Positions 1 through 18,081 of a stretch of DNA of 64,000 nucleotides are shown one piece after another. Under the pieces are notes generated by a model. It saw only the letters and a program-made list of their open reading frames with translations, ran no database searches and had not been told where the DNA came from. The first letter of the stretch is position 1; each line of letters begins with the position of its first letter. The stretch is from the IMG/VR virus record IMGVR_UViG_3300020810_001156, positions 124,001 through 188,000 of that record; one strand, 5' to 3'. The position numbers were made by a program, and so were the translations under genes.

Positions 1-1
1 A

Positions 2-1297
2 GCATCTACCGAAGTATCCGCATCGTTTGACTTGTTGAGAAAGAACAAACCATTTATCGCTGAAGAAACAATTCAGTATGTATCTTCTTCTTGGAGTGGT
101 GTTTACTATGATGAAGCTAAATGTAGAAGAGATACTGGATTCATAGTAGATGCAGCAGCAACCGATTTATTGTATGGTGGTAACGAAAGAAGTGTTATCG
201 CTGGTAATTACTACTTCAAATACCCATCATCGGCAACTGAAAGAGGTGTACCTTCGGTGGTATCTCAATTAGACCCAACAACTACTGGTATCAAATATGC
301 TAGTGGATTGGCTCAAAATGTGATTCAAAATATTGAATGGAACGAACCATCAGCATCGGTATTAGTTGCGGCTGATTTATTGGTGAATAACAAAACATTT
401 ATTCAAAAAGAAACTATCGCATTTTTATCTTCATCTTGGAGTGAGTTCGCTTACAATGATGTAAGTTGTAGTAGAGATTTGGGTTACATCATAGATGCGG
501 TTAGAACTGATTTGGTATATGGTGGTAACGAAAGAAGTATCCAAGCGGCTACATTCTATTACTATATTCCTTCAGTAGCAATTACTGAACAAAAACCCCA
601 AACAATCGATGGTATTGATTTCGCAAAAGGAATGGCTGAAAAAGTTATTAAGCAAGACCAATTAACATTCGCTAGTTTGAATAGAAGAAATGGTTACAAT
701 GAATTAAGAGCAGCGAAGAAATATTTACAATCATCGGCAATTTCATATACTGAAGCAGCATTCCCAGGTTTTGAATATAACGAAGAAAAATGTTATAGAG
801 ATACTGGATTTATTTTAGATGCTATTTCAACTGATTTACTATATGGTGGTAATGAGAGAAGTATTGAAGCTGCAAAATCTTACTACAATGGTGTTTATGG
901 TGATGCTAGTGTAGTGATAAACGAACAAAAGAAAGAAACGGCAGAAACAAATAGATATTTAAGAACTTTATTCCAAAAAGTTGCTAGAAATGCACCATTG
1001 GAATTATTTGGTTCACTAATTATTACTACTGGACATGATTTCTCATATGCTGGTTCTGGTGTAACTTATAAAGCATTACCTCCTAACCAAGGTGGTAATG
1101 GAGTTCCAGACCCAGATAAAGAAATTGTTGAATTGGGTGGAGGTAGAGTATTCTTCACTGCGGGTAACGAACTTGGTGACTTTAAGATTGGTACGGGACT
1201 TGTAATTAATCAGGCAACTGGTACATTACAGGGTAGAACATTCTCTCGTTCATTATTCTCATTAGTTACACCATTCTCTCTCGCTCTGGAAGGGTAA
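2..1297 (+). CDS. 5'-truncated virion structural protein with ~110-aa helical repeats (CxRDxG...D..YGGNERS)
   Basis: Frame is open from position 2, upstream of the called TTG at 32. Three copies of K/SCxRD(T/L)G(F/Y)I.DA..TDL.YGGNERS. C-terminus GHDFSY.GSG...GDFKIG resembles large T4-like virion proteins. Confidence 0.7.
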   Translation, partial: ASTEVSASFDLLRKNKPFIAEETIQYVSSSWSGVYYDEAKCRRDTGFIVDAAATDLLYGGNERSVIAGNYYFKYPSSATERGVPSVVSQLDPTTTGIKYASGLAQNVIQNIEWNEPSASVLVAADLLVNNKTFIQKETIAFLSSSWSEFAYNDVSCSRDLGYIIDAVRTDLVYGGNERSIQAATFYYYIPSVAITEQKPQTIDGIDFAKGMAEKVIKQDQLTFASLNRRNGYNELRAAKKYLQSSAISYTEAAFPGFEYNEEKCYRDTGFILDAISTDLLYGGNERSIEAAKSYYNGVYGDASVVINEQKKETAETNRYLRTLFQKVARNAPLELFGSLIITTGHDFSYAGSGVTYKALPPNQGGNGVPDPDKEIVELGGGRVFFTAGNELGDFKIGTGLVINQATGTLQGRTFSRSLFSLVTPFSLALEG

Positions 1298-1339: not shown

Positions 1340-2203
1340 ATGGCAGATGAATTAATTCCATTAAACGCATTTAAATCAGTAGTTGCAACTTTGACTGGTG
1401 AGGAAGACCAGGTGTATAAAGCACCTACTGGTGTTTCTACTATTATATTATCGGCTCAAATTACAAACAATGGTACACAAACCCAAGAAGTTGTAATTAA
1501 GTTAGCACCAAACAGAATTTTACCAGTTCCACAAGTTGCTGGAATTGCAAATTCAGGAAGTTTCTTCTCATCATCAGCATTAATAGTTGAAAATAAAAAT
1601 TTCCTTAAAAAAGAAGTAGCTGCTTACACTAGATTCAATAATAATCTTCAAGAAATTCCATTTGGATTTTCATCATCAAGATATGAAGAATATGTTGAAA
1701 CCGCTGTAAACGCTGTAACATTTGATATAATTAATAGTGGTAGTACAATTAGAACCAATAAAGCGGCACTATCTTTTTATGATAAAGATGGTGTATTATT
1801 GATTCCATCAAATCAAATTACAGCATCAATAAATGCAATATCGTACACAAATACACTTGCTCAGAAAATTATTCTAAATGAATCAGTAACGGGTTCTGAT
1901 GATGTAGATAGATTATATCAATCAAGCGTAACACAATCAATTAATACTAATTTAATAGCTGAAAGTGGTTCATCAAATATTATAAGAGAACTATTTACTG
2001 TAATATCTGGAGCAATTCAAGACCCAGTAACGGAAACACAAACTCCAGTAGAGTTTGTAACTAATTTTCCGATACCAACAGGTGATTCATTTTCCCCTGT
2101 TGTGGCTGGTAAATTAGTATTGGAGGAAGATTATGGACTGGTTTTTTCTGGTTCTACTGATTTAAGTGTGGTTCTATCTATATTAGAAACCGCTAATGAA
2201 TAA
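1340..2203 (+). CDS. virion adaptor protein: beta-sandwich split by a degenerate helical repeat
   Basis: N- and C-termini resemble ORF 17738..18070. The middle (LIVENKNFLKKEVAAY...NAVTFDI) is a degenerate copy of the upstream repeat. Confidence 0.6.
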   Translation: MADELIPLNAFKSVVATLTGEEDQVYKAPTGVSTIILSAQITNNGTQTQEVVIKLAPNRILPVPQVAGIANSGSFFSSSALIVENKNFLKKEVAAYTRFNNNLQEIPFGFSSSRYEEYVETAVNAVTFDIINSGSTIRTNKAALSFYDKDGVLLIPSNQITASINAISYTNTLAQKIILNESVTGSDDVDRLYQSSVTQSINTNLIAESGSSNIIRELFTVISGAIQDPVTETQTPVEFVTNFPIPTGDSFSPVVAGKLVLEEDYGLVFSGSTDLSVVLSILETANE

Positions 2204-2218
2204 AAATAAGAGTTGTAA

Positions 2219-5200
2219 ATGGGTCAATTACTAAGTGGTAAAGTAAAAGTAACTCGTCCGCAGGACGTATCGCTGGATAGGTATCAGTATTTATCCCTTT
2301 CAGAAGCCGAGCCTAATTTGGGGGTTCCTGAAAGTGGTAGTATTAGTTCTGGTTCTTTTGCATTAGTTGCATCGGATGATGCTGGTAATAGACTATTTGT
2401 TACTAAAATTCAATTAGAAGAGTTTAGTGGTTCATTTAGTGGTTCATTTCAAGGTGATGGTTCACAATTAACAAATTTACCCTTAGTAGAAGATGCTAGT
2501 AGATTAATATCAGGTTCTGCATCGGCATCAATTTCTCCACAAACTGGATTCTTAGTTAACACATCTGGTTCATTTGATGGTGGATTGACTGTTGATGGTA
2601 ATGGTAGATTTACTGGTGATTTAGTTGTTGATAATAAAATTGTAGCAAGAGAAATTTTAGTTGAATTTATTTCTTCATCTATATTTTTCTCATCTGGTTC
2701 AAATAAATTTGGTGATGAACTAACCGATAGACAAGAATTTACAGGTTCGGTTGAAATAACTGGTTCACTAACTACCGATGGTGTTGTTGAAATACCATTT
2801 GATAGCGCGGGATTCTTTAGTGGTAGTGGTGAGGGATTAACTAACATTCCTCGTTCAGCACTTACAGAAGATGCATTAGTAACCAATAAAATTACTTCAG
2901 GTTCAGTAACCGCTTCGGTTGACCCACAAAGAGGATTTATATTAGAAGATACTGAAGGTGATGTTAAAGCAGAATTTAGTGGTTCTGTATTTGTAAGTAG
3001 TTCAGTATCTGCATCTATCTTTAGTGGTAGTGGTGCTGGATTATTTGATATACCTCGTTCTGCTCTTACTGAAGATGCATTAGTAACAAATAAAATAACA
3101 AGTGGTAGTGTAACCGCATCTGTTTCACCCGATGAAGGATTTAAAGTAGAATCATTAGAAAGTGGTTCTCAGATAACTGGTTCAATTAAAGTTAGTGGTA
3201 GTATAACCTTAGCAGATGGTGAATCTTATTCTGGTAGTGGTGCTAATTTATTCGATATTCCATTATCTGCATTATCAACAGAAACATTAATAGCAACATC
3301 TTTAGAAAGTGGTAGTGTAACCGCATCGGTTTCACCCGATGAAGGATTTAAAGTAGAATCATTAGAAAGTGGTTCTCAAATCACGGGTTCAATTAGAATT
3401 AGTGGTAGTATTACATTATCCGATGGAGAAACATATTCTGGTAGTGGTGCTGATTTATTTGATATACCTCGTTCTGCTCTTACTGAAGATGCATTAGTAA
3501 CAAATCAAATTACATCTGGTTCTGTAACCGCATCTGTTTCACCTCAAGGATTCTTTAAAGTGGAATCAACTGGTTCGGTAAAAACTGAATTAAGTGGTTC
3601 ACTTTTTGTAAGTGGTGGTATTTCTGGTTCGTTCTTTTCTGGTAGTGGTGCTGGTTTATTTGATATTCCATTATCTGCATTAGCTGAAGAGGTTGTAGCT
3701 GCAACAAAAATACAAGATGGTAATGTAACAGCCTCAGTTGATGAACAAAATGGTTTTATAGTAATATCTGAAGCAAGTGGTTCACAATTTACAGGTTCTT
3801 TATTTGTAAGTGGTGGAGTTACATTAGAAGATGGAATATACACTGGTGATGGTAGTGGATTATTTAATATTCCGATATCTAACTTAGCTGGTGATTCACC
3901 AAGAATTGCTAGTGGTTCAGCAACAGCATCAGTTGACCCAGAGGATGGTTTTAAATTCTTTGGAGCAGATAGAGCAGAATTTAGTTCTTCATTATTTGTA
4001 TCTGAATCAATTGAAGCAAAGGAAATTAGTGGTTCGTTTAGTGGTAGTGGTGCTAACTTATTCGATATTCCAGAATCAGCACTTTCTTTTGAAATAAGTA
4101 AAATTACTTCTGGTTCAGTAACCGCATCCGTTGATGCTGAAGATGGTTTTGTTGTAACTTCAATCGCTAGTGGTTCAACATTCTTTGGAGAGGTTAGAGT
4201 AGAAAGCGGTTCATCATATAGTGGTAGTGGTGCTAAACTATTTGATATTCCAGTAGCTGCTATTGTAGATTTAGATACTTCATTAATATTTAGTGGTTCA
4301 ATTACCGCATCTACAAACCCAGAAGATGGATTTGTAGTAACTTCGATAGAAAGTGGTTCAACATTCTTCGGTGATGTAAAACTATCTTCAGGTTCAGTAT
4401 TTAGTGGTAGTGGTAGGGATTTATTTGATATACCAAGAAGTGCACTAACAGAAGATGCATTACTTTCATCATTTATAGCTAGTGGTTCGGTAACGGCATC
4501 AGTATCCCCAGTATTTGGATTTAGATTAGAAGGTACTAATAGAGCAGAATTTAGTTCTTCGGTGTTTGTAGAAAGTGGAGTTTCTGCATCGGTATTTAGT
4601 GGTAGTGGTGCTGGGTTAACTGATATACCGGAATCAGCTTTAGCATTTGATATTAATAAAATTAGTAGTGGTTCTGCAACTGCATCAATTTCACCAAATG
4701 AAGGATTTGTAGTTAATACATTCTCAAAATTTGAATTCCCAGTATCAGCATCTATGTTTAGTGGTAGTGGTGCTGGATTATTTGATATTCCACAATCAGC
4801 ATTAACTGAAGAAGCATTTAGAATTGCAAGTGGTTCAGCAACTGCATCCGTTTCTCCAAACTTAGGATTTGTAGTTAATACATCTTCATTATTTGAGCAA
4901 GATGTTAGAATAGATAGTGATTTGGTTGTAACGGGTAGAATTACAACAAACGAATTATATACAAACTTTATTTCATCATCGATTGTTTATTCATCTGGTT
5001 CAAATATATTTGGTGATTCAGCTGAAGATAAACAAACATTAATTGGTGAAACTGAGATTGTTGGTAATGTAACCGCAAGTGGAATTATAAGTTCATCATT
5101 TGAAGGTGATGGTAGTAGATTATTCAATATACCATTAAACGCATTATCAGAAGAAGCATTTAGAATTGCTAGTGGTTCAGTATCGGCTTCATTATTATAC

Positions 5201-8200
5201 AAATCAGGTTCAGATGAACCAAGTCTTTTTAGAGTAGAAGATACAACTAGAAAAGAAATACGAACTGAATTAAGTGGTTCTCTTGGAGTAAGTGGTAGTT
5301 TATCCGCATCTATGTTTAGTGGTAGTGGTGAAGGTTTATTTGATATTCCTCGTTCAGCATTAGCACCAGATGCATTATTATCAAATTTAATAGCAACTGG
5401 TTCAATTACTGCTTCTCTTAATCCAAATGGTGGAATGAATGTAAATACATTCACAACAATCACTGGTGGATTATTTGTAAAAGCAGAACAAACTCCAGGT
5501 CAAGCTGAAGTATCACTTATAGAATTGGGTGATACTACTAGAATTAGTGGGTCATTATTTATTTCAGAATCAGTAACCGCATCACTATTTCAGGGTGATG
5601 GTAGTGGTTTATTTAATATTCCGGCCGCACAACTTTCTGGTGATTCACCAAGAATAGCATCTGGTTCGGCAACCGCATCGATTTCACCTAACTTAGGATT
5701 CCAAGTAAATGTACCAGCAACATTTGATAGTAGTATTTCTGCATCAACTACGATATTTGCTAAAGATGTTGAAGTTACTGATGATGTAACCGCTGATAGA
5801 TTCATTGGTAATGAAGTTAGTGGCGCATTTAGTGGTAGTGGTAGAGATTTATTTGATATTCCTCGTTCAGCATTAACTGAAGATGCATTACTTACAAATA
5901 ATATTACAAGTGGTTCTATTACTGCATCGGTGATAGTAGTACCGCCTGAATCTGGTAGTAACATATTTAGAGTAGAAGATTCTACTGGAACTACCAAATC
6001 AGAATTTAGTGGTTCTGTATTTGTTTCAGAATCAATTACTTCTAAATTTTTCATTGGTGATGGTTCTCAATTAACAAATGTACAAGCTGAAGAATCTCCT
6101 GTAATTGCTAGTGGTTCTGCTACGGCATCGGTTGAAAGTGGAGAGTTCTTTATCGTAAATGCTGGTAGTGGTTCTCAATTTACAAGTAGTATTGATATAA
6201 CTGGTTCTGTAGTAATTTCAAATGATTTAACTGCTAGTAAGATTAATGTAGATGAGTTAGATGCTACGATTATCACTTCAGAAGAATTTACTGGTTCATT
6301 TTCTGGTTCATTTGCTGGTGATGGTTCACAACTTAATAATATTCCATTTACATCTCTTAGTGGGGATGCACCTAGAATCGGTAGTGGTTCGGTAACCGCA
6401 TCAACTGACCCAGATAGAGGATTTGTTGTAGAATCTTTAGATAGTGGTTCATTATTCACTGGTTCACTTTTCGTAAGTGGAAATGTTCAAATAAACGATG
6501 GTATTTTTAAAGGTGATGGTGCTGGATTATTTAATATTCCTCAATCGGCATTAGCAGAAGATTCTCCAAGAATTGCTAGTGGTTCTGTAACTGCGTCTGT
6601 ATCACCTAATTTAGGATTTGTAGTTAATACTTCTGGTTCGATTCAAGGTGATTTAACAATTGATAATGATTTATATGTAAGTGGGGCTATAAATGCTAGA
6701 GAGTTAAATGTAACATTTATAGATTCGGTTGTAATTACATCTTCTGGTTCAAATACATTTGGAAATAGTTTAGATAATAGACAAGAATTTACAGGTTCAG
6801 TATTTGTAACTAATTCATTAGATGTAGATGGTGTTATAACTGGTGATGGTAGTGGTTTATTCAACATTCCACAATCGGCACTTACTGAAGAAGCATTTAG
6901 AATTGCTAGTGGTAGCGTTTCTGCTTCAGTAACACCTGAAAGAGGATTCTTTGTAGAATCTACTGAAAGTGGTTCTGAATTTACGGGTTCAGTTAAAATT
7001 AGTGGAAGTTTAGATGTAAATGAAGGATTTAAAGTTGGTACTGATATTACTGCAAGTGAAGGTACGGTATCGGCATCATTCTTTGTGGGTGATGGTTCTC
7101 AATTAACCAACTTACCTGCGGCTGAGTTCGCTGAGGAAGCTAAGAGAATAGCTAGTGGTTCTGCTACTGCATCCATTTCACCCAACTTAGGGTTTGTAGT
7201 CAATACAACAACTAACTTAGAGGATGATGTAAGAATAACAGGTAGTTTCATAGTATCATCATCAAACGGATTTGTTGATACTGGTTCAATAAATACAACA
7301 TTTAATGTTATCAATGAGGGTTCATCCGCATATAGATTTAGTGGTGGTGTAGTTGGTGATAACCCAACAATTACAATTGTAAGAGGATTAACTTATACAT
7401 TCAATGTAAATGCACCTTCACATCCATTCTATATAAAAACTCAAAATTCCGATGGAACTGAATTTGAATATAGTGGTAGTGTAATAACAAATAATGGTAC
7501 TGAAAATGGTACTATAACTTGGATAGTTTCTGGTTCCGCTCCAAATACACTTTATTATAATTGTGAAAATCACCTTGCAATGGCTGGTGAATTCAATATA
7601 GTTGATGAAATACCACTATACGGACAAATTGATTTAATTGGTGATACTGAGGTAGTTGGTAATCTAAATATAACAGGTAGTACATTTGTAACTGGTAATT
7701 TAGATGTATCCAACACTATAACAGCTAATGAGGTAAGTGCTAGTAAATTCTTAGGAGACTTTAGTGGTTCATTTAGTGGAAGTGGTAGAGATTTATTTAA
7801 TATTCCACTTTCAGCACTTGCTGAGGATGTACTTCCTCGTTCATTTATCGCAAGTGGTTCAGTAACCGCATCGGTTTCACCAAATAATGGATTTGAAGTA
7901 AACTCATCAGCATCAATTGAAGGTAACTTAAAAGTTATTGGTGATACTTTCGTAACTGGTGGATTGGTGATTTCATCATCAATTACTGAAGTAGAGGCTG
8001 TATCTCAATCATTCTATATAACATTTAACGCTGATAGTTCATCATACTTGGTGGATAGTGTAGAAGAACCAACTTTAACGCTGGTAAGAGGTATTGAATA
8101 CACATTCAATGTAAATACACCAAATTACAACTTCTACTTAAAAACAAACAATACAACTGGTAGTGGTGATTTATTCTCAACTGGTGTAACCAATAATGGT

Positions 8201-11200
8201 GAGGATAGTGGTTCAATCGTATTTACAGTTCCTCAATCAGCTCCTGGTACACTTTACTATATTTCTGAAGAATCTTCTTCATTAAGTGGTAGTATTAGAG
8301 TTGCTGATAATCTTAATATAAATGAAAGAATTGCATTTGAAGGTAAGACTGAAGTTAGTGGTAATTTAGATGTATCACAAACTATTATCGCAAATGATGG
8401 TTCTATAACAAACGATTTAATTGTTGGTGATACAACAACTACTGAAAAATTAGTAGCAAATCATATCACAGCATCTTCAATTACCGCATCTTATTTAGAT
8501 TTCATTAATTTTGATAATGGAATTCAGAGTGTAGCTGGTAGATTGAAGTGGAACGAAACCGATGGTACTCTTGATTTAGGAATGAAGGGCAATGAAGCTA
8601 CACTTCAATTAGGACAAGAATTATATTATCCGCCTGTTGTAAACAAAGATGGTAATAATCTAATCAATGGTACTTTAGTAATGGTTGACCCAGCTCAACC
8701 AGCACAAGGTAATAGAATTAGAGTAATAAAATCAGTAACCGATGGAACTTACGCTGAGGATTTATTAGTTGGTATTCTTACCGAACCTATCGATAATAAT
8801 CAAGAAGGATTTGTAACTTGGTTTGGATATGTAAGAGGAGTTCAGATAAACGCATTAGAATCGGGTTCTTTAAAAGATAGTGGTTCAGTTTGGGCAGAGG
8901 GTGATATTCTTTATGGAGACCCTCAAAGACCAGGTGGTTTAACAAATGTTCAACCTGAAGCTCCAAACTTAAAATCATCTATCGCTGTAGTTACTGCTAA
9001 GAATGGTAACAATGTAACATTATTGGTAAGACCTCATTTGGGAGACCACTTATATGATTTACATGATGTACAAATTACTACATCTGATGCTATATTGGTT
9101 GATAGTGGTTCAATTAAATCCGATGATGGTGATTTATTAGTTTGGAATAGTGGTTCTCAAAGATGGGAAAATACAAGAGAAAATTTAGAACTTAGTGGTT
9201 CATTCTCTGGTTCATTTGCTGGTGATGGTTCTCAATTAACCAACATTTCATTAGCAAACTTATCATTTGATGTAAATAGATTAGTAACCGGTTCAGTAAC
9301 GGCATCGGTATCTAACGATGGTAAATTTGTAGTAGAATCTACTGGTTCTGTTAGAACCGAACTTAGTGGTTCGTTATTTGTTTCTGAATCAATAGAAATT
9401 GGTGGTATCTATACTGGTGATGGTTCCGGTCTTACAAATATCTCACTTGCTAACTTAGCATTTGATGTAGCACAAATCGTAACTGGTTCGGTAACTGCAT
9501 CTACAAATGAAGATGGTAGATTCATTGTTGAGGACCCGTTTGGTGGAGTTAAATCTGAGTTTAGTGGTTCGGTTGAAATATCGCAATCCCTAAATGTAGG
9601 TGGTGTAATTAGTGGTGATGGTAGTGGTTTAACAAATATTTCAATCGCTAACTTAGCATTTGATGCTGATAGAATTGCTACGGGTTCTGTAACTGCATCT
9701 ATTGATGAAAGTGGGTTCTTTAGAGTATTCTCTACATCATCTGTAAAATCAGAATTTAGTGGTTCGGTATTTATATCAGAATCAATATCAGCATCTCTAT
9801 TTGTAGGTGATGGTGGTGGATTATTTAACATTCCAGCGGAAGCACTTCAAGACTTAGAATTGGATAGAATCAAATCTGGTTCTGGTGAAGCTGTGATTGA
9901 CCCAAATCAATTAACTGTAAATGTTCCATTATCGGCATCTCTATTCAGAGGTGATGGTGGTGGATTATTCAATATCCCAGCGGAATCGTTGACAGATTTA
10001 GAATTAGATTTAATTACTTCTGGTTCAACATTCGCACAAGTAAGTGATAACAACGGATTTGTAGTATTTGCACCTGAGAGTGGTTCACAATTAACTGGTT
10101 CATTATTCGTAAGTGGGGCAATCTCACTAATTAGTGGTTCATCATTTAGTGGTAGTGGTAGAAATCTATTTGATATTCCAGCGGATGCAATCTTTGATTT
10201 AGACCAAACTAGAATTACTTCTGGTTCGGTAACGGCATCTGTATCACCTGTTCAAGGTTTCGTAGTAAACACTTCGGCATCTATTGAGGGTGATTTGACA
10301 GTTCAAAATGATATTACAGTAAACGATATTACTGCAAACGATATTACCGCAAGTGTATTTAGAGGTGGTTTACTTTCTGGTTCATTTGAGGGAGCATATA
10401 GAGGTGAGGGTGATGCTGAAGATAGAGAAATTCTAATATTTGATGCGGCATCAAACAAATTTGTACCTGTACCTGAATCTACTCCAACTACAACCGAACC
10501 ATTCTCAAATGCTACTGAAGTAACTATTGTTCATAACTTTGATGTAGCATATCCAATAGTACAGGTTTATGAAACTGGTTCAAATGGAATGATTATTCCT
10601 TTAGCTATTGAATCTATTGATAATAATACTGTTAAAGTTAAGTTTAGTGGATTAACAAGTGGACAAATCGTTGTTGGTAGTGGTGGTTCTAAAATTAGTG
10701 GAGCAATAAGTGGTGATAATGTAATAGGAACAGTTAGTTCAGCATCATATGCTATATTCGCTGAAACTGCTGGAACTGCATCTTCGGTAGCTGGATTAGA
10801 TTCAGCATCATTAGCAGCACTACAAGATTTAGAAAACTTTGTAAGAAACGAACAAACGGCATCAATGACCGTTCTTTCTTCTTCATTCGCAATTACAGCA
10901 TCTTACGCTGAAAATGCTGAAGTTAGTGTTGATTTAAGTGAATACATACAAAATAGCCAAACCTCTTCAATGAGTGTGGCTACATCATCATATTCATTAT
11001 TTGCAGTAACCGCTTCATACGCATTAAATGCTGGTGCTGGTGGTGGTGGAACTGATTTATACATATTTGAAACTGGTTCAGTAGTAAATGGATTAGTAGG
11101 AAATATGAACTTTACTGGTTCTGGTGTTAGTGTAACACCTTCTGGTTCAGATGGAGTATTGGTAGAAGTATTAAGTAACTCTACTGGTGATGGATTCCCA

Positions 11201-14200
11201 TTCTCAGGAAAAGCTGAATTAAGTGGTAGTTTAAATGTAACTGGAAGTTTAGTTGTAACTGGTAGTGTATTCTTAGATTTAGAAACTGGTAGTTCCAATG
11301 ATTTAGTAATCTATGATACAACTAATAAAAAATTACAAACTAAGAGTATAGCTGAAGTAGCTGGTACTTCTGGTACAACAGGTACTGCTGGTACATCTGG
11401 TACTGCTGGAACAACTGGTTCATCAGGTACAACTGGTTCTTCTGGTACATCTGGTATAGATGGTACTTCTGGAACATCAGGTACTGATGGAACTTCAGGT
11501 AGTTCTGGTACAACTGGTTCTTCTGGTACAACTGGTTCAGCGGGGACATCTGGTTCTTCTGGAACCTCAGGTTCAGATGGTACTTCTGGTTCTTCTGGAA
11601 CTTCGGGTTCATCTGGTTCAAGTGGAAGTAGTGGTACTACTGGTAGTAGTGGTACAACTGGTTCAGCGGGGACATCTGGTTCTTCTGGAACTTCTGGGAC
11701 AAGTGGAAGTAGTGGTACTTCTGGTTCAACTGGTACTGCTGGAACATCGGGTACTTCTGGGACAAGTGGAAGTAGTGGTTCAAGTGGAACATCTGGTATC
11801 GAAGGTGGTGGAATGTTTGTGGTTAGAAGTAATGGGTTTGTATATAATATAGATGGTACTTCTGGAGATTTCCCAACCCTAACAGTGGTAAGAGGGGAAT
11901 TATTCTACTTTGATGTAAGTAATGTAAGTTCATCGCATCCATTCGCATTGAGATTGGCAGATGGTAATACATCAGCAGTTCCGGGTACTACAAACAATGA
12001 CCCAACAAACGGAAATCATAGTACAAATGTATTAATAAAATATAGAGTACCTGAAAATGCACCTGATAGTATAGTTTATCAATGTGCTATTCATTCATCA
12101 ATGATTGGTACTATTGAGATAGTAGATAAAAATGGTTCTTCTGGTACATCGGCAACTTCTGGTACTTCTGGAACAAGCGGAACATCAGGAACATCAGGTA
12201 CTTCTGGTACTGATGGTTCGACCGGGTCTGCTGGTACATCTGGTACTGCTGGAACAACTGGTTCATCAGGTACAACTGGTTCATTTGGTACATCGGGTAG
12301 TAGTGGAACACGTGGTACATCGGGAACATCTGGTACTGATGGTTCTACTGGTTCAGCGGGTTCTACTGGTTCAGCTGGTTCATCGGGTACAACTGGTTCA
12401 ACAGGTACTTCGGGCTCTTCTGGTTCAAGTGGTACTTCTGGAACTTCAGGTACCGATGGTTCAACTGGTAGTGGGGGTACATCTGGTTCTTCTGGTTCAG
12501 CTGGAACTTCTGGAACAAGTGGTACATCCGGCTCAGCTGGTACATCAGGTACTTCTGGTTCTGCTGGTACATCGGGTAGTAGTGGAAGTAGTGGTTCAAC
12601 TGGTTCAAGTGGTACAACTGGTTCAGAGGGAACTTCAGGTTCTTCGGGTACATCTGGAACTTCTGGTTCATCGGGCTCAAGTGGAAGTAGTGGAAGTAGT
12701 GGTTCGACAGGTTCGGCTGGTACAAGTGGTATAGGTACTGATGGAACTTCGGGTTCTTCTGGTACAAATGGAACATCAGGTAGTAGTGGTACATCTTCAA
12801 CTTCTGGAACTTCGGGTTCAACGGGTTCAAGTGGTACAACTGGTTCTGAAGGAACAAGTGGAACTTCGGGCACATCAGGCACTGCTGGTACTTCTGGTTC
12901 TTCTTCAACTTCTGGTACAAGCGGAAGTAGTGGAACTTCAGCAACTTCTGGAACAAGCGGTACAAGTGGTACAAGTGGAACATCTGGTAGTGATGGTTCG
13001 ACAGGTTCTGCTGGTTCTGCTGGTTCATCGGGTTCATCTGGAACAAGCGGTAGTAGTGGTACAAGTGGGGCACAAGGTACAAGCGGTTCTGCTGGTACAA
13101 GTGGTTCAAGTGGTACATCTGGTGAGCAAGGAACTTCGGGTTCAGCTGGTACGTCTGGTTCTACTGGTTCAGCTGGTACAACAGGTTCTGCTGGTAGTAC
13201 TGGTTCAGCTGGTACTTCTGGAACAAGTGGTACTTCTGGTTCTGATGGTACATCTGGAACGAGTGGCTTAGATGGAACTGCTGGTACAAGTGGTAGTAGT
13301 GGAACTTCAGGTTCAACTGGTTCTGCTGGTACATCTGGAACTTCAGGAACAAATGGAACATCAGGTACTTCTGGTACTGATGGTACATCGGGAACTTCTG
13401 GAACAACAGGTTCAGCTGGTTCATCGGGTACATCAGGTTCATCTGGTGAGAGTGGAAGTAGTGGAACATCTGGTACTGATGGAAGTAGTGGAACTTCCGG
13501 CTCCGATGGAACATCGGGTACAACCGGAACTGCGGGTACGTCTGGTAGTGGAGGAACAACAGGTTCAGCTGGAACTTCTGGAACAAGCGCAACTTCAGGA
13601 ACTTCTGGAACAAGTGGTACATCTGGCTCATCAGGTTCAGCTGGTTCAGCTGGTTCAACTGGAACTGCTGGTAGTGGAGGTACATCAGGTACATCAGCTG
13701 AAGGTAGTAGTGGAACAAGTGGTACAACTGGAACTGGCGGAACAAGTGGTACAACAGGTAGTGGAGGAACTTCTGGAACTTCGGGTTCAGCAGGTTCAAC
13801 TGGAACGGGTGGTACATCAGGTACATCAGCTGAGGGGACTTCAGGTTCAGCGGGTACATCTGGTACAAATGGAACAAGTGGAACTTCAGGTACGGATGGA
13901 ACTTCTGGTTCAACTGGAACTGCTGGTAGTGGTGGTTCTTCTGGTACATCAGCTGAAGGAAGTAGTGGTACATCTGGAACATCTGGAATCAATGGAACAA
14001 GTGGTAGTGCTGGTACATCAGGTTCTTCATCAACTTCTGGAACATCTGGAACGAGTGGTTTAGATGGAACATTCTTTGGTAGTAGTGGAACAAGTGGTAC
14101 GGGCGGTTCAGCTGGTACATCAGGAGCTGGTACTGATGGTTCAGCGGGTACATCAGGTTCTTCTGGAACGAGTGGTTTAGATGGTACTTTCTTTGGTAGT

Positions 14201-15991
14201 AGTGGAACAAGCGGAACTTCAGCAACATCTGGCTCATCTGGTTCATCAGGAACATCTGGTTTAACTGGAACTTCTGGTAGTACAGGTTCATCGGGTACAT
14301 CAGCTGAAGGTACTTCAGGTTCTTCTGGTACAAGTGGTGCTGGGACATCTGGAACATCTGGAATCAATGGAACAAGCGGTTCAACTGGAACTGCTGGTAC
14401 TTCTGGATTAGATGGTACTTTCTTTGGTAGTAGTGGAACAACAGGTACTGGGGGTACTTCTGGTACTTCTGGAGCTGGTACTTCTGGTACTTCTGGTTTT
14501 GATGGTATAAATGGTACAGCTGGCACAAGCGGTGTTGATGGTACATTTTTTGGTACTAGTGGTACAACTGGTACATCAGGTTCTTCTGGTTCGACTGGTA
14601 CATCAGGTACAAGTGGTTTAGGTTCATCGGGTACTTCTGGTTTAGATGGCACTTTCTTCGGTTCAGCAGGTACTTCTGGTACATCTGGTGCTGGTACAAG
14701 CGGAAGTAGTGGTACAACTGGTACTTCGGGTTCTTCTGGTTTAGATGGAACTAACTTTGGTTCAGCTGGTACATCAGGTACTTCTGGTTCAACTGGAACT
14801 TCAGGTTCGGCTGGTACTTCTGGTTCGACTGGTACATCAGGTACAAGTGGTTTAGATGGAACTAACTTTGGTTCATCAGGTACTTCTGGTGTAACTGGTA
14901 CTTCTGGAACAACAGGTACTGATGGTTCATCTGGAACTTCTGGTTCTTCTGGTTTAGATGGTACAAATTTTGGTTCGGCAGGTTCATCAGGTACTTCTGG
15001 TATAACTGGTTCTTCAGGAACATCTGGTTCTGGTACTTCGGGTACTTCTGGATTGGGTACTAATGGTACATCAGGTACATCAGCTGAAGGTAGTAGTGGT
15101 TCTTCGGGTACATCAGGAGCTGGTACAGATGGTTCTGCTGGTAGTACTGGTTCAGCTGGTACTTCTGGAACAAGTGGTACTTCTGGTTTAAATGGAACAT
15201 TCTTCGGAAGTAGTGGTACATCGGCAACTTCTGGAACAACAGGTACTGATGGTTCATCTGGAACTGCTGGTTCTTCTGGTACAAGTGGATTAAATGGAAC
15301 ATTCTTCGGAAGTAGTGGTTCATCGGGTACAACTGGAACTGGTGGTACTTCGGGTGTAAGTGGTTCAGATGGAACATCTGGACTTGGTAGCAGTGGTACA
15401 TCGGGTACTTCTGCGATAGGTTCATCTGGAACTGGTGGTACATCGGGTACTTCTGGAGTTGATGCAACCGGAACCGCTGGTACATCGGGTACTTCTGGAG
15501 CTGGTACTTCTGGTACTTCTGGATTACTTGAGTTAAATGGTGTAACACCAAATGGTGTAATTACCTATAATGGTACTGGAAATGAAGCAACTGTTGAGAG
15601 TAATCTTATTTATGATGGAGTTACATTAGAAGTACCACAAATATCAGGTTCAGTTTATATTGAATCAAAAATCTTTATTGAACTTTATAAAGATTTAGGA
15701 GCTGGTGCCAATGTAACAATCGATTTAGAACAAGGAAATAACTTCGAATATGAAGTAAATAATAACTGTACATTTACATTCTCAAACCCACCAGGAAATC
15801 CAAAAGCATTTGGATTCACATTGGTGATAGAAAATGGTGGAGCATTTACAGTAAGTTGGCCAACTGGAGTATTGTGGGCAAATGGTAACGCACCAACGCT
15901 AACAACATCTGGTAAAGATATCTTAGTATTCTATACTTATGATACGGGAACAACTTATTATGGTTTCCTAAGTGCAGCAAATATGAGTTAA
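2219..15991 (+). CDS. giant fibre protein (4590 aa): ~70-aa SGS repeats, 3 cupredoxin-like domains, Gly-X-Y tract, C-terminal tail-fibre domain
   Basis: Many copies of FSGSG.GLFDIP.SAL...I.SGSVTASV.P..GF; HPF...Y.C..H..M.G motifs; GTS/GSS triplets; C-terminal FTFSNPP...VSWP..V.W..G.APTLT..G.DILVF. Confidence 0.85.
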   Translation: MGQLLSGKVKVTRPQDVSLDRYQYLSLSEAEPNLGVPESGSISSGSFALVASDDAGNRLFVTKIQLEEFSGSFSGSFQGDGSQLTNLPLVEDASRLISGSASASISPQTGFLVNTSGSFDGGLTVDGNGRFTGDLVVDNKIVAREILVEFISSSIFFSSGSNKFGDELTDRQEFTGSVEITGSLTTDGVVEIPFDSAGFFSGSGEGLTNIPRSALTEDALVTNKITSGSVTASVDPQRGFILEDTEGDVKAEFSGSVFVSSSVSASIFSGSGAGLFDIPRSALTEDALVTNKITSGSVTASVSPDEGFKVESLESGSQITGSIKVSGSITLADGESYSGSGANLFDIPLSALSTETLIATSLESGSVTASVSPDEGFKVESLESGSQITGSIRISGSITLSDGETYSGSGADLFDIPRSALTEDALVTNQITSGSVTASVSPQGFFKVESTGSVKTELSGSLFVSGGISGSFFSGSGAGLFDIPLSALAEEVVAATKIQDGNVTASVDEQNGFIVISEASGSQFTGSLFVSGGVTLEDGIYTGDGSGLFNIPISNLAGDSPRIASGSATASVDPEDGFKFFGADRAEFSSSLFVSESIEAKEISGSFSGSGANLFDIPESALSFEISKITSGSVTASVDAEDGFVVTSIASGSTFFGEVRVESGSSYSGSGAKLFDIPVAAIVDLDTSLIFSGSITASTNPEDGFVVTSIESGSTFFGDVKLSSGSVFSGSGRDLFDIPRSALTEDALLSSFIASGSVTASVSPVFGFRLEGTNRAEFSSSVFVESGVSASVFSGSGAGLTDIPESALAFDINKISSGSATASISPNEGFVVNTFSKFEFPVSASMFSGSGAGLFDIPQSALTEEAFRIASGSATASVSPNLGFVVNTSSLFEQDVRIDSDLVVTGRITTNELYTNFISSSIVYSSGSNIFGDSAEDKQTLIGETEIVGNVTASGIISSSFEGDGSRLFNIPLNALSEEAFRIASGSVSASLLYKSGSDEPSLFRVEDTTRKEIRTELSGSLGVSGSLSASMFSGSGEGLFDIPRSALAPDALLSNLIATGSITASLNPNGGMNVNTFTTITGGLFVKAEQTPGQAEVSLIELGDTTRISGSLFISESVTASLFQGDGSGLFNIPAAQLSGDSPRIASGSATASISPNLGFQVNVPATFDSSISASTTIFAKDVEVTDDVTADRFIGNEVSGAFSGSGRDLFDIPRSALTEDALLTNNITSGSITASVIVVPPESGSNIFRVEDSTGTTKSEFSGSVFVSESITSKFFIGDGSQLTNVQAEESPVIASGSATASVESGEFFIVNAGSGSQFTSSIDITGSVVISNDLTASKINVDELDATIITSEEFTGSFSGSFAGDGSQLNNIPFTSLSGDAPRIGSGSVTASTDPDRGFVVESLDSGSLFTGSLFVSGNVQINDGIFKGDGAGLFNIPQSALAEDSPRIASGSVTASVSPNLGFVVNTSGSIQGDLTIDNDLYVSGAINARELNVTFIDSVVITSSGSNTFGNSLDNRQEFTGSVFVTNSLDVDGVITGDGSGLFNIPQSALTEEAFRIASGSVSASVTPERGFFVESTESGSEFTGSVKISGSLDVNEGFKVGTDITASEGTVSASFFVGDGSQLTNLPAAEFAEEAKRIASGSATASISPNLGFVVNTTTNLEDDVRITGSFIVSSSNGFVDTGSINTTFNVINEGSSAYRFSGGVVGDNPTITIVRGLTYTFNVNAPSHPFYIKTQNSDGTEFEYSGSVITNNGTENGTITWIVSGSAPNTLYYNCENHLAMAGEFNIVDEIPLYGQIDLIGDTEVVGNLNITGSTFVTGNLDVSNTITANEVSASKFLGDFSGSFSGSGRDLFNIPLSALAEDVLPRSFIASGSVTASVSPNNGFEVNSSASIEGNLKVIGDTFVTGGLVISSSITEVEAVSQSFYITFNADSSSYLVDSVEEPTLTLVRGIEYTFNVNTPNYNFYLKTNNTTGSGDLFSTGVTNNGEDSGSIVFTVPQSAPGTLYYISEESSSLSGSIRVADNLNINERIAFEGKTEVSGNLDVSQTIIANDGSITNDLIVGDTTTTEKLVANHITASSITASYLDFINFDNGIQSVAGRLKWNETDGTLDLGMKGNEATLQLGQELYYPPVVNKDGNNLINGTLVMVDPAQPAQGNRIRVIKSVTDGTYAEDLLVGILTEPIDNNQEGFVTWFGYVRGVQINALESGSLKDSGSVWAEGDILYGDPQRPGGLTNVQPEAPNLKSSIAVVTAKNGNNVTLLVRPHLGDHLYDLHDVQITTSDAILVDSGSIKSDDGDLLVWNSGSQRWENTRENLELSGSFSGSFAGDGSQLTNISLANLSFDVNRLVTGSVTASVSNDGKFVVESTGSVRTELSGSLFVSESIEIGGIYTGDGSGLTNISLANLAFDVAQIVTGSVTASTNEDGRFIVEDPFGGVKSEFSGSVEISQSLNVGGVISGDGSGLTNISIANLAFDADRIATGSVTASIDESGFFRVFSTSSVKSEFSGSVFISESISASLFVGDGGGLFNIPAEALQDLELDRIKSGSGEAVIDPNQLTVNVPLSASLFRGDGGGLFNIPAESLTDLELDLITSGSTFAQVSDNNGFVVFAPESGSQLTGSLFVSGAISLISGSSFSGSGRNLFDIPADAIFDLDQTRITSGSVTASVSPVQGFVVNTSASIEGDLTVQNDITVNDITANDITASVFRGGLLSGSFEGAYRGEGDAEDREILIFDAASNKFVPVPESTPTTTEPFSNATEVTIVHNFDVAYPIVQVYETGSNGMIIPLAIESIDNNTVKVKFSGLTSGQIVVGSGGSKISGAISGDNVIGTVSSASYAIFAETAGTASSVAGLDSASLAALQDLENFVRNEQTASMTVLSSSFAITASYAENAEVSVDLSEYIQNSQTSSMSVATSSYSLFAVTASYALNAGAGGGGTDLYIFETGSVVNGLVGNMNFTGSGVSVTPSGSDGVLVEVLSNSTGDGFPFSGKAELSGSLNVTGSLVVTGSVFLDLETGSSNDLVIYDTTNKKLQTKSIAEVAGTSGTTGTAGTSGTAGTTGSSGTTGSSGTSGIDGTSGTSGTDGTSGSSGTTGSSGTTGSAGTSGSSGTSGSDGTSGSSGTSGSSGSSGSSGTTGSSGTTGSAGTSGSSGTSGTSGSSGTSGSTGTAGTSGTSGTSGSSGSSGTSGIEGGGMFVVRSNGFVYNIDGTSGDFPTLTVVRGELFYFDVSNVSSSHPFALRLADGNTSAVPGTTNNDPTNGNHSTNVLIKYRVPENAPDSIVYQCAIHSSMIGTIEIVDKNGSSGTSATSGTSGTSGTSGTSGTSGTDGSTGSAGTSGTAGTTGSSGTTGSFGTSGSSGTRGTSGTSGTDGSTGSAGSTGSAGSSGTTGSTGTSGSSGSSGTSGTSGTDGSTGSGGTSGSSGSAGTSGTSGTSGSAGTSGTSGSAGTSGSSGSSGSTGSSGTTGSEGTSGSSGTSGTSGSSGSSGSSGSSGSTGSAGTSGIGTDGTSGSSGTNGTSGSSGTSSTSGTSGSTGSSGTTGSEGTSGTSGTSGTAGTSGSSSTSGTSGSSGTSATSGTSGTSGTSGTSGSDGSTGSAGSAGSSGSSGTSGSSGTSGAQGTSGSAGTSGSSGTSGEQGTSGSAGTSGSTGSAGTTGSAGSTGSAGTSGTSGTSGSDGTSGTSGLDGTAGTSGSSGTSGSTGSAGTSGTSGTNGTSGTSGTDGTSGTSGTTGSAGSSGTSGSSGESGSSGTSGTDGSSGTSGSDGTSGTTGTAGTSGSGGTTGSAGTSGTSATSGTSGTSGTSGSSGSAGSAGSTGTAGSGGTSGTSAEGSSGTSGTTGTGGTSGTTGSGGTSGTSGSAGSTGTGGTSGTSAEGTSGSAGTSGTNGTSGTSGTDGTSGSTGTAGSGGSSGTSAEGSSGTSGTSGINGTSGSAGTSGSSSTSGTSGTSGLDGTFFGSSGTSGTGGSAGTSGAGTDGSAGTSGSSGTSGLDGTFFGSSGTSGTSATSGSSGSSGTSGLTGTSGSTGSSGTSAEGTSGSSGTSGAGTSGTSGINGTSGSTGTAGTSGLDGTFFGSSGTTGTGGTSGTSGAGTSGTSGFDGINGTAGTSGVDGTFFGTSGTTGTSGSSGSTGTSGTSGLGSSGTSGLDGTFFGSAGTSGTSGAGTSGSSGTTGTSGSSGLDGTNFGSAGTSGTSGSTGTSGSAGTSGSTGTSGTSGLDGTNFGSSGTSGVTGTSGTTGTDGSSGTSGSSGLDGTNFGSAGSSGTSGITGSSGTSGSGTSGTSGLGTNGTSGTSAEGSSGSSGTSGAGTDGSAGSTGSAGTSGTSGTSGLNGTFFGSSGTSATSGTTGTDGSSGTAGSSGTSGLNGTFFGSSGSSGTTGTGGTSGVSGSDGTSGLGSSGTSGTSAIGSSGTGGTSGTSGVDATGTAGTSGTSGAGTSGTSGLLELNGVTPNGVITYNGTGNEATVESNLIYDGVTLEVPQISGSVYIESKIFIELYKDLGAGANVTIDLEQGNNFEYEVNNNCTFTFSNPPGNPKAFGFTLVIENGGAFTVSWPTGVLWANGNAPTLTTSGKDILVFYTYDTGTTYYGFLSAANMS
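11363..15520 (+). repeat. Gly-X-Y (GTS/GSS/GSA/GTT) coding repeat, interrupted by a globular domain at ~11810-12130
   Basis: 9-nt periodic GGN-(A/T)CN-(TCN/AGY) pattern, visible in the translation. Confidence 0.95.
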
Positions 15992-18070: not shown

Positions 18071-18081
18071 AGTAATAATGT

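What the first reader, a model, noticed from the sequence alone, without database searches (positions are those of the whole stretch)
100..900. Virion repeats resembling the phycobiliprotein bilin-attachment helix (C-x-R-D)
Seen: three ~110-aa repeats, each with KCRRDTGFIVDA.., SCSRDLGYIIDA.. or KCYRDTGFILDA.. followed by L.YGG; the Cys is invariant and is the only Cys per repeat. Established: the phycocyanin alpha chromophore site reads approximately KCARDIGYYLR...GG, with the Cys attached to bilin and Arg/Asp contacting it. Inference: a globin/phycobiliprotein-like fold on the virion that may bind a tetrapyrrole, for photoprotection or light sensing. The similarity could be convergent.
Basis: inference. 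Interest (0 to 1): 0.6.

Follow-up and report, generated by a model that had tools for sequence, protein, structure and literature searches.

The report
Phycobiliprotein-like repeats in a phage protein
A giant structural protein of an uncultured marine phage carries 24 copies of a small domain that has the fold and the pigment-attachment site (Cys-x-Arg-Asp) of cyanobacterial light-harvesting phycobiliproteins, so phage particles may carry bound bilin pigments, which nobody has tested.

Summary
The three repeats (window 26-1009) are the last of 24 repeats of about 108 aa in a 4828-aa ORF that starts 13 kb upstream of the window. Each repeat has one Cys, always in C-x-R-D; these are 24 of the protein's 26 Cys.

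An AlphaFold model of one repeat (pLDDT 84.5) superposes on phycobiliprotein residues 41-147 at 2.0-2.3 A over 96-97 of 105 residues (Z about 10). The six best of 48,161 PDB representatives are all bilin-binding globins. A profile search of PDB sequences returns only phycocyanin alpha, aligned Cys-to-Cys84. Profile-profile comparison gives P = 2e-7; controls give P >= 0.13.

Across 1586 repeat copies in 150 diverse proteins, C, R and D are 95-98% conserved. A degenerate copy in the next gene has lost all three. Among 50,697 phage records the domain occurs only in cyanophages. This genome also encodes overlapping haem oxygenase and bilin reductase genes.

Fold and site homology are well supported. 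Bilin binding, virion location and any light-related role are inferred. I found no prior description.

The parts
1..1297 (+). 3' end (last 431 codons plus stop) of a 4828-aa giant ORF, G000 110811-125297, with 24 phycobiliprotein-like repeats
   Evidence: PHROG matches to giant tail fibre and virion structural families.
26..340 (+). Repeat 22 of 24: compact globin domain (helices equivalent to phycobiliprotein B, E, F and G). This is the copy that was modelled.
122..124 (+). Cys codon of K-C-R-R-D, aligned to phycobiliprotein Cys84 (the bilin thioether site)
371..685 (+). Repeat 23 of 24
467..469 (+). Cys codon of S-C-S-R-D
695..1009 (+). Repeat 24 of 24 (the most divergent of the three)
791..793 (+). 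Cys codon of K-C-Y-R-D
1013..1294 (+). Conserved C-terminal domain of about 94 aa that ends 134 of 151 repeat-bearing proteins (150 representatives plus the query); fold unresolved
   Evidence: The AF2 model is poor (pLDDT 47).
1340..2203 (+). Neighbouring 287-aa ORF. It holds one degenerate copy of the same globin domain (window 1580-1888) in which the triad is replaced: C to Y, R to E, D to Y.
   Evidence: family HMM E = 5e-12. The ORF is conserved next to the giant gene in related contigs.

Best explanation
Each repeat of about 108 aa is a diverged, trimmed member of the bilin-binding globin superfamily (phycobiliproteins and BBAGs). It keeps helices B, E, F and G and the C-x-R-D chromophore site on helix E. 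It has lost the N-terminal X-Y hairpin and the residues that phycobiliproteins use to form alpha-beta dimers. Twenty-four such domains are strung along a giant phage structural protein, probably associated with the baseplate or fibres.

The most likely working model has three steps. In the infected cell each domain takes up a linear tetrapyrrole. The bilin could come from the phage's own haem oxygenase and ferredoxin-dependent bilin reductase, or from the host. It binds covalently through the Cys, with Asp holding the pyrrole nitrogens and Arg and Lys holding the propionates. The released particle would then carry an array of bilins.

Shown here: the repeats, the fold match, the site alignment, the conservation, the distribution and the bilin genes in the genome. 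Inferred: homology rather than convergence, bilin loading, virion location, and any function such as light-gated adsorption or photoprotection.
For: Fold:
- The AF2 model has pLDDT 84.5 and pTM 0.77.
- An exhaustive structural search of 48,161 PDB representatives puts six bilin-binding globins on top: photocobilin Z 10.8, far-red allophycocyanin 9.6, ApcE bilin domain 9.0, and others.
- In the second-look search, 88 chains score Z >= 8 and every one of the 50 entries listed is a phycobiliprotein or a biliprotein derived from one. The best reach rmsd 2.0-2.2 A over 96-97 of 105 residues, model 1-105 on chain 41-147.
- The Foldseek list is also dominated by phycobiliproteins.

Site:
- A profile of the 24 repeats searched against 177,635 PDB sequences returns only two hits. 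Both are phycocyanin alpha, aligned C33 = C84 (E = 0.43).
- hhalign of 400 family members against CpcA gives P = 3.5e-7.
- Against a broad phycobiliprotein alignment it gives P = 2.2e-7 over 92 columns. It also aligns K32 = K83, R35 = R86, D36 = D87, Y28 = Y74 and the [YF]-P of helix B.
- Reversed and shuffled controls give P >= 0.13.

Selection:
- In 1586 repeat copies from 150 proteins that are at most 50% identical to each other, C is 95%, R 95% and D 98% conserved.
- The neighbouring gene's copy of the domain has lost C, R and D together yet still matches the family. The triad is therefore not needed for the family's sequence signature, and by inference not for the fold.

Context:
- Among 50,697 phage records, all 180 with a match are cyanophages (179 named as such) or one marine single-cell virus. 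They include P-HM2 gp7 and two giant S-PM2 proteins.
- The genome has an overlapping haem oxygenase and bilin reductase gene pair.
- In related contigs the repeats (3 of 3) and the reductase (2 of 2) are present wherever the contig covers that side. Five contigs of the sister clade, and the nearest isolate Mel-JY01, show no match for either.

Precedent:
- C-x-R-D is the recognised bilin-attachment motif of phycobiliproteins and of BBAG-1 and BBAG-3, which self-attach bilins without lyases (PMC10151467).
Against: - No chromophore was or could be tested here.
- When the 10 motif columns are masked, the profile-profile score becomes non-significant (P = 0.19). Sequence homology therefore rests on the motif, supported by the fold.
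- Pfam PF00502 does not detect the repeats.
- The tool's own caveat is that Z below about 13 for helical domains can reflect a common arrangement.
- The domain lacks helices X, Y and H.
- It has its own near-invariant residues, D47 (99%) and Y63 (98%), that phycobiliproteins lack. These could serve another ligand or a purely structural contact.
- The bilin genes lie 118 kb from the repeat gene.
- Pelagibacter phage Mosig has the same HO-reductase cassette but no repeat. S-PM2 has repeats without a reductase hit. The two features are therefore not obligately linked.
- No CpeT-type lyase is present in this genome.
- Pigmented cyanophage particles have not been reported, as far as I know (own knowledge).
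Confidence: 0.55

Rival explanations
1. The domain is a chromophore-free structural relic. It descends from a bilin-binding globin but now serves only as a rigid spacer in a long fibre. C-x-R-D is kept for folding, helix capping or contacts between repeats.
For: - Tandem arrays in giant fibre-like proteins are typical of structural spacer domains.
- The family-specific invariant residues D47 and Y63 are not bilin-site residues.
- The dimerisation elements of phycobiliproteins are lost.
- Photocobilin homologues show that this fold can lose bilin affinity (PMC10979010).
Against: - A lone, 95%-conserved Cys in each of about 1586 copies is hard to explain structurally for a domain destined for an oxidising environment.
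- The adjacent paralogue still matches the family HMM without C, R or D.
- Precisely the chromophore-contact residues (K, C, R, D) are retained, while the interface positions (R93, Y97) are replaced.
Confidence: 0.22
2. The conserved Cys, Arg and Asp, with D47 and Y63, form a site for something other than a bilin. Candidates are a metal ion, a host-surface ligand, or covalent cross-links (disulfide or thioether) between fibre subunits.
For: - D42, D47 and N53 form an acidic, highly conserved patch absent from phycobiliproteins.
- Phage fibre proteins often use metal sites or covalent cross-links (own knowledge).
Against: - No His or second Cys is conserved.
- The motif, its helix position and its flanking K and G-[YF] match the bilin site specifically.
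- The family is confined to phages of bilin-making hosts or to phages with their own bilin genes.
Confidence: 0.13
3. The resemblance is convergent or chance. The domain is an unrelated four-helix domain that happens to resemble the globin core and to carry a short similar motif.
For: - Sequence similarity outside the motif is not significant.
- The PDB hit has E = 0.43 and the Foldseek hits E = 0.4-2.
- Helical folds give middling Z scores easily (note).
- The ESM Atlas searches did not return phycobiliproteins.
Against: - Three independent lines point to the same family: a sequence profile search of all PDB, a structure-only search of 48,161 chains, and profile-profile alignment with controls.
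- All three give the same residue register.
- 92% of the model superposes at about 2 A.
- The ungapped counts of the structural alignment agree with the hhalign alignment.
Confidence: 0.1

Closest known systems
Phycobiliproteins, especially C-phycocyanin alpha (CpcA; Pfam PF00502)
   Same: - Globin-like helices B, E, F and G superpose at about 2 A.
- K-C-x-R-D-x-G-[YF] lies on helix E in the same register, with G-G 18 residues after the Cys.
- The [YF]-P at the end of helix B and a Tyr in the B-E loop also align.
   Different: - The repeat is 105-108 aa rather than 160-177 aa.
- It has no X-Y hairpin and no helix H.
- The B-E loop is 11 residues shorter and the F-G loop is longer.
- Positions R93 and Y97 are replaced by D42 and T46; the adjacent D47 is a family-specific invariant.
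- It is not recognised by PF00502.
- It occurs as 24 tandem copies inside a phage structural protein rather than as a free subunit of an antenna.
BBAGs (bilin biosynthesis-associated globins; Rockwell, Martin and Lagarias 2023, PMC10151467)
   Same: - They are phycobiliprotein paralogues outside the antenna.
- BBAG-1 and BBAG-3 carry C-x-R-D and self-attach bilins without lyases.
- They are associated with haem oxygenase and bilin reductase genes.
- Their functions are unknown.
   Different: - BBAGs are single-domain cellular proteins encoded next to the bilin genes.
- Here the domains are repeated in a virus structural protein, 118 kb from the bilin genes.
- No BBAG sequence was compared directly.
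Photocobilin / photoglobin bilin-binding domain (PDB 8j2y, 8j2w)
   Same: - It is the best structural match (Z 10.8, rmsd 2.5 A over 93 residues).
- It is also a compact five-helix globin without the X-Y hairpin.
- It is embedded in a larger protein and binds biliverdin through a key Asp.
   Different: - Photocobilins lack the Cys and bind the bilin non-covalently and flipped.
- They are fused to a B12-binding module.
- No B12 domain is detected here.
ApcE (core-membrane linker) phycobiliprotein-like domain
   Same: It is a phycobiliprotein-type domain embedded in a large multidomain protein (Z 9.0). ApcE attaches its bilin autocatalytically (own knowledge).
   Different: ApcE has a single copy, keeps the N-terminal helices, and is a cellular antenna component.
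Giant baseplate and fibre proteins of T4-like cyanophages (PHROGs 4527, 5342, 701; P-HM2 gp7; S-PM2 'short tail fiber' giant ORF)
   Same: - They share the repeat family and the C-terminal domain.
   Different: - The isolates have 2-9 detectable copies per genome, against 24 in one protein here.
- Those proteins carry only generic structural labels (tail fibre, structural protein, baseplate wedge) in the records seen. I found no published description of the repeat as globin-like or phycobiliprotein-like.

Membership tests
Phycobiliprotein (PF00502) | Globin-like core with helices B, E, F and G enclosing the Cys84 bilin | tested here: met
   VIA Z 8.6-10.2, rmsd 2.0-2.9 A over 94-97 of 105 residues, model 1-105 on chain 41-147. 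The model is a prediction (pLDDT 84.5).
Phycobiliprotein (PF00502) | C-x-R-D bilin-attachment motif on helix E | tested here: met
   Present in 24 of 24 repeats. It is aligned to C84, R86 and D87 by hmmsearch and hhalign. C, R and D are 95-98% conserved in 1586 copies.
Phycobiliprotein (PF00502) | N-terminal X-Y helical hairpin and the conserved R93/Y97 interface that build the alpha-beta monomer | tested here: not met
   Alignments start at phycobiliprotein residue 41-44. The 108-aa period leaves no room for the hairpin. Positions 93 and 97 are D and T in the repeat. The role of these residues is from own knowledge.
Phycobiliprotein (PF00502) | Significant match to the family's curated sequence model | tested here: not met
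   No PF00502 hit for the protein, a single repeat or the genome.
Phycobiliprotein (PF00502) | Covalently bound bilin; assembly into trimeric discs | not testable with these tools
   This needs expression, spectroscopy or mass spectrometry.
Bilin-binding globin superfamily (phycobiliproteins + BBAGs + photoglobins) | Shared compact globin fold, with the closest structural neighbours being bilin binders | tested here: met
   The top six of 48,161 chains are all bilin-binding globins. RsbR and sensor globins follow at lower Z.
Bilin-binding globin superfamily (phycobiliproteins + BBAGs + photoglobins) | Association with haem oxygenase and ferredoxin-dependent bilin reductase genes | tested here: inconclusive
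   Both genes are in the same genome but 118 kb away. They co-occur at clade level. Mosig has the cassette without repeats.
Bilin-binding globin superfamily (phycobiliproteins + BBAGs + photoglobins) | Bilin binding, self-catalysed or lyase-assisted | not testable with these tools
Photocobilin | Fusion to a B12-binding domain; no Cys at the bilin site | tested here: not met
   No B12-binding family was detected. The Cys is present here. Photocobilins lack it.
Cyanophage giant virion (baseplate/fibre) proteins | Sequence membership in PHROG tail-fibre and virion-structural families, and a shared C-terminal domain | tested here: met
   phrog_4527 E = 3.5e-226, phrog_5342 E = 5e-173, phrog_701 E = 1.8e-57. 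The C-terminal domain is shared by 134 of 151 proteins. The gene lies in a structural module with a tail sheath gene.
Cyanophage giant virion (baseplate/fibre) proteins | Physical presence in purified particles | not tested
   Virion proteomes exist for S-PM2, Syn9 and S-SM1 (PMC3037559). I did not trace the repeat proteins in their tables, and none exists for this uncultured phage.

The most novel reading that the evidence does not exclude
The phage particle carries its own bilin-based photoreceptor or light shield. Arrays of bilin-loaded globin domains on baseplate or fibre proteins would change conformation or reactivity in light. That would explain the light-dependent adsorption of cyanomyoviruses such as S-PM2 and P-HM2. 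It would also mean that phage bilin genes (ho1, pebS/pcyA/pcyX-type reductases, cpeT) exist at least partly to chromophorylate the phage's own structural protein rather than the host antenna.
Probability: 0.15. Interest if true: 0.95.

Novelty: new variant of a known kind. Interest (0 to 1): 0.85.

Why it matters
Two questions in cyanophage biology have been open for 15-20 years.

1. Why do phages carry bilin-synthesis genes and a CpeT-like protein? Their role is called 'a mystery' and 'unresolved' in PMC3037559. The purpose of the HO-reductase cassette in phages of non-phototrophs is also unknown (PMC11480375).

2. What makes adsorption of some cyanomyoviruses light-dependent without host photosynthesis? 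Light-sensitive tail fibres have been proposed (PMC6628666).

A virus-encoded, phage-specific family of C-x-R-D globin domains in structural proteins supplies a concrete candidate acceptor for phage-made bilins and a candidate light-responsive element. Both ideas can be tested with standard co-expression and virion spectroscopy.

The finding would also extend the bilin-binding globin superfamily to viruses and to a tandem-array architecture. A minimal 105-residue bilin-binding scaffold would be of interest for fluorescent-protein engineering.

Tried and rejected
Identity of the genome:
- I first assumed it was Prochlorococcus phage P-SSM2, from its size and bilin genes. That was wrong.
- Megablast found no near-identical phage record.
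- The bilin reductase is only 30% identical to its best phage match, Pelagibacter phage Mosig.
- The nearest isolate by DNA polymerase (52%) and tail sheath (46%) is Microcystis phage Mel-JY01.
- The sequence occurs in salt-marsh and marine metagenomes.

Family and database searches that gave nothing useful:
- Pfam gave nothing for the whole protein or for single parts.
- PF00502 gave nothing on the genome.
- The ESM Atlas feature search and Atlas fold search returned no phycobiliproteins and nothing informative.
- The search for related loci with the repeat alignment failed for lack of a conserved stretch.
- The profile found nothing in 401 cyanobacterial genomes, so no cellular donor was identified.
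- A search for stand-alone single-domain proteins returned only fragments from short contigs.

Genes not found in this genome:
- No CpeT.
- No psbA or psbD.

Tests of the link between bilin genes and repeats:
- Mel-JY01 has neither repeats nor a reductase hit.
- Mosig has the HO-reductase cassette but no repeat. A strict one-to-one link is therefore rejected.

Other dead ends:
- AF2 of the C-terminal domain was too poor to use (pLDDT 47).
- The middle region of the protein (aa 3040-3430) has no PDB or Pfam match.
- My impression of cupredoxin-like segments in the neighbouring giant ORF got no sequence support.
- The phiCpeT paper (PMC5336146) is not held, so what I recall of it is unverified and not used as evidence.

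Not used: complex prediction and read laying, because no claim here depended on them.
Full report
**What is in the sequence**

The finding lies in frame 2 of the + strand, in an ORF that is open at the window's 5' end. The window is bases 124001-188000 of a single-contig virus record of 252,603 bases, rated 100% complete by CheckV. In the full record the ORF runs from 110811 to 125297 and encodes 4828 residues.

A scan for C-x-R-D finds 24 sites. Within blocks they are spaced 108-117 residues apart, and they account for 24 of the 26 cysteines in the protein. Alignment of the 24 units (A1) gives 40-61% identity to the first window repeat and ten invariant columns: Y28, C33, R35, D36, I40, D47, Y63, S68, Q81 and T85. 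Their Cys codons are at 122-124, 467-469 and 791-793.

**Fold**

AlphaFold2 on A1, without templates, gives a confident model: pLDDT 84.5 and pTM 0.77. It has four main helices (8-22, 30-50, 54-65, 83-100) after a short N-terminal one.

- Foldseek against the PDB gives only weak E-values (0.4-2), but the list is almost entirely phycobiliproteins.
- A structure-only search of 48,161 PDB representatives ranks six bilin-binding globins on top. They are photocobilin 8j2y_B (Z 10.8), far-red allophycocyanin 8or7_A (9.6), the ApcE bilin domain 4xxi_A (9.0), 8imk_G (9.0), photocobilin 8j2w_B (8.9) and phycoerythrin 5aqd_M (8.6).
- Only below these come RsbR, colicin pore domains and sensor globins.
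- Re-aligning Foldseek's 470 candidates gives 88 chains at Z >= 8, and every one of the 50 entries listed is a phycobiliprotein or a biliprotein derived from one. The best superpose 96-97 of 105 residues at 2.0-2.3 A, with model 1-105 on chain 41-147.

The repeat therefore corresponds to helices B, E, F and G of a phycobiliprotein. It lacks the X-Y hairpin, most of helix A, and helix H. The tool warns that Z below about 13 is common for helical domains. The argument here rests on the specificity of the hit list and the coverage, not on Z alone.

**Is the Cys the phycobiliprotein Cys?**

Three sequence tests agree.

1. An HMM of A1 searched against all 177,635 distinct PDB sequences at E <= 10 returns exactly two proteins. 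Both are phycocyanin alpha chains, aligned so that C33 falls on Cys84 (E = 0.43).
2. I fetched real cpcA/cpcB loci and other phycobiliproteins from cyanobacterial genomes. I also built a family alignment of 400 repeats from the 150 best representative proteins. hhalign against CpcA gives probability 93% and P = 3.5e-7. Against CpcB it gives P = 8e-4.
3. Against a broad alignment (phycocyanin, phycoerythrin, allophycocyanin and others) hhalign gives P = 2.2e-7 over 92 columns, repeat 3-96 on phycobiliprotein 44-146. The pairs are K32 = K83, C33 = C84, R35 = R86, D36 = D87, G38 = G89, [YF]39 = Y90, G51-G52 = G102-G103, Y28 = Y74, and the [YF]-P at the end of helix B on the K-F-P of phycobiliproteins.

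The gap pattern is an 11-residue deletion in the B-E loop and extra residues in the F-G loop. This reproduces the aligned-residue counts of the structural superposition.

The controls cut both ways. Reversed or column-shuffled phycobiliprotein alignments give P >= 0.13. Masking only the ten motif columns also drops the score to P = 0.19, although the alignment path stays the same. The sequence evidence is therefore essentially the motif in the right place, and the rest of the case is the fold.

**Selection on the site**

A profile search of 1.84 billion representative proteins finds 1299 proteins at E <= 1e-3. The best 150 are mostly giant proteins with up to 35 copies each. In 1586 repeat copies from these proteins the most conserved positions are D47 (99%), D36 (98%), Y63 (98%), C33 (95%) and R35 (95%). 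Next come T85 (90%), Y28 (84%) and N53, G38 and D42 (78-80%).

Positions that in phycobiliproteins hold the alpha-beta interface residues R93 and Y97 (role from own knowledge) are D42 and T46 here. The adjacent D47 is a near-invariant residue with no phycobiliprotein counterpart. The chromophore-contact residues are therefore kept, while the dimerisation residues are replaced.

The next gene (window 1340-2203) contains one more copy of the domain (family HMM E = 5e-12). In it C, R and D are replaced by Y, E and Y, while D47 is retained. That gene is conserved beside the giant gene in related contigs. The domain can evidently persist without the triad, so the triad's conservation in the arrays points to a function. 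The literature names C-x-R-D as the bilin-attachment motif of phycobiliproteins and of BBAG-1 and BBAG-3, which self-assemble with bilins without lyases (PMC10151467).

**What protein and what virus**

PHROG matches are to giant 'tail fiber', 'short tail fiber' and 'virion structural protein' families. The last 94 residues form a domain that terminates 134 of 151 repeat proteins. Its fold could not be modelled. The gene sits in a structural block, next to a 4590-aa collagen-repeat ORF and upstream of a tail sheath gene.

Among 50,697 phage records a single repeat finds 180 records. By first word of the organism name they are Synechococcus 152, Cyanophage 19, Prochlorococcus 8 and one marine single-cell virus. 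The matches lie in P-HM2 gp7 (baseplate wedge initiator), in two giant S-PM2 ORFs and in similar proteins. In S-PM2 one of the giant ORFs lies two genes downstream of cpeT.

The profile finds nothing in 401 cyanobacterial genomes, so the family as such is viral.

The virus itself is not a known isolate.

- It has no near-identical phage record.
- Its nearest isolate is Microcystis phage Mel-JY01, with DNA polymerase 52% and tail sheath 46% identical.
- It occurs in salt-marsh and marine metagenomes.
- It lacks psbA/psbD and CpeT.

Its host is therefore unknown. A cyanobacterium is plausible but not shown.

**Bilin genes**

The genome encodes a 171-aa haem oxygenase whose gene overlaps that of a 223-aa ferredoxin-dependent bilin reductase. 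GroES and GroEL genes follow. The reductase is most like that of Pelagibacter phage Mosig (30.5%) and cyanophage PcyA (about 27%).

In IMG/VR contigs of the same clade (polymerase 74-79% identical), the three contigs that extend to the upstream side carry 10-22 repeats. The two that extend to the downstream side carry the reductase. Five long contigs of the 45-53% clade carry neither. Mel-JY01 likewise has no repeat match and does not appear among the reductase hits. This is clade-level co-occurrence, probably one evolutionary event, and only weakly supportive.

Against a strict link, Mosig has the same cassette but no repeat. Many cyanophages with repeats have no reductase of their own.

**Mechanism proposed**

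Shown:
- a phage-specific family of compact globin domains with the phycobiliprotein fold and the C-x-R-D site;
- its arrangement as arrays in giant structural proteins;
- a bilin pathway in the same genome.

Inferred:
- The domains descend from a bilin-binding globin. The motif is closest to the phycocyanin alpha type.
- They bind a bilin at the Cys in the infected cell, self-catalysed as in BBAGs or ApcE, or with host S-type lyases or phage CpeT where present.
- Particles therefore carry bilins.

What the bilins would do is open. Light-dependent adsorption is documented for S-PM2, P-HM1 and P-HM2. [quoted passage not shown] S-PM2 and P-HM2 carry C-x-R-D repeats. Photoprotection and a purely structural role are the alternatives.

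I put about 0.85-0.9 on the fold and site homology, about 0.55 on bilin binding, and about 0.15 on a virion photoreceptor role.

**Novelty**

Full-text searches for cyanophage with globin-like or bilin, for C-x-R-D with phage, and for 'phycobiliprotein-like' with virus found no description of such domains. The nearest published idea is a suggestion that phage-made bilins might meet a BBAG or a phytochrome (PMC11480375). A separate paper reports cyanobacteriochrome-like GAF folds in a freshwater cyanophage (PMC12481020, listed, not read).

The kind of domain, a bilin-binding globin, is known. The viral, tandem-array, structural-protein setting is new. The library searched does not cover subscription journals.

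Noticed in passing
window 1340-2203 (domain at 1580-1888): A small 287-aa ORF directly downstream of the giant gene holds one copy of the same globin domain with the C-x-R-D triad replaced (C to Y, R to E, D to Y). A 292-293-aa ORF with the same weak match follows the giant gene in two related contigs.
   Followed up: partly
window 2219-15991: A 4590-aa ORF with repeats of about 70 aa rich in S-G-S, 15 Pfam collagen stretches (E = 1e-106), and G+C rising to 0.48. Two segments (window 7346-7675 and 11861-12190) read like cupredoxin domains with an H...C-x2-H-x3-M pattern. Neither Pfam nor a PDB sequence search supports that reading.
   Followed up: partly
window 18082-29682: A third giant ORF (3866 aa) in the same block, with a G+C-rich, strongly G-skewed start (window 18001-20000: GC 0.425, skew 0.31). 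It does not contain the globin repeat.
   Followed up: no
G000 243386-244557 (L171:9387-10558): A haem oxygenase (171 aa) and a ferredoxin-dependent bilin reductase (223 aa) with overlapping genes. Thymidylate synthase lies about 0.4 kb upstream, separated by a 70-aa ORF. An unassigned 99-aa ORF, GroES and GroEL follow. The reductase is only about 30% identical to its best phage match (Pelagibacter phage Mosig), which has the same overlapping cassette.
   Followed up: partly
whole genome G000: This 252.6-kb myovirus shares structural repeats with marine cyanomyoviruses. It has no psbA or psbD and no CpeT by Pfam search or by tblastn with cyanobacterial D1/D2 and S-PM2 CpeT. Its host is unknown, and it occurs in salt-marsh and marine metagenomes.
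   Followed up: partly
L009 (G000 110811-125300), protein residues about 400-620, 960-1220, 1640-2110, 2650-2810, 3420-3540 and 3860-3980: Between the blocks of globin repeats lie runs of a second repeat of about 45 aa (I-K-V-T-x-x-x-Q-Y-I-S-S ... I-I-x-N-G). There is also an N-terminal region resembling a beta-helix (about residues 100-400) and a middle region of about 390 aa with an H-x3-H-x-H string. None has a Pfam or PDB sequence match.
   Followed up: partly
L013 (S-PM2 NC_006820.1, 165928-177267): In the RefSeq record of S-PM2 about 16 tRNA features are placed inside the 3779-aa 'short tail fiber' ORF, which also carries a tRNA-style locus tag. This looks like a coordinate error in the annotation. 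The giant ORF lies two genes downstream of cpeT.
   Followed up: no
L166 (Microcystis phage Mel-JY01, 22183-22410): The nearest isolate encodes a ribosomal protein S21 inside its head-gene block.
   Followed up: no
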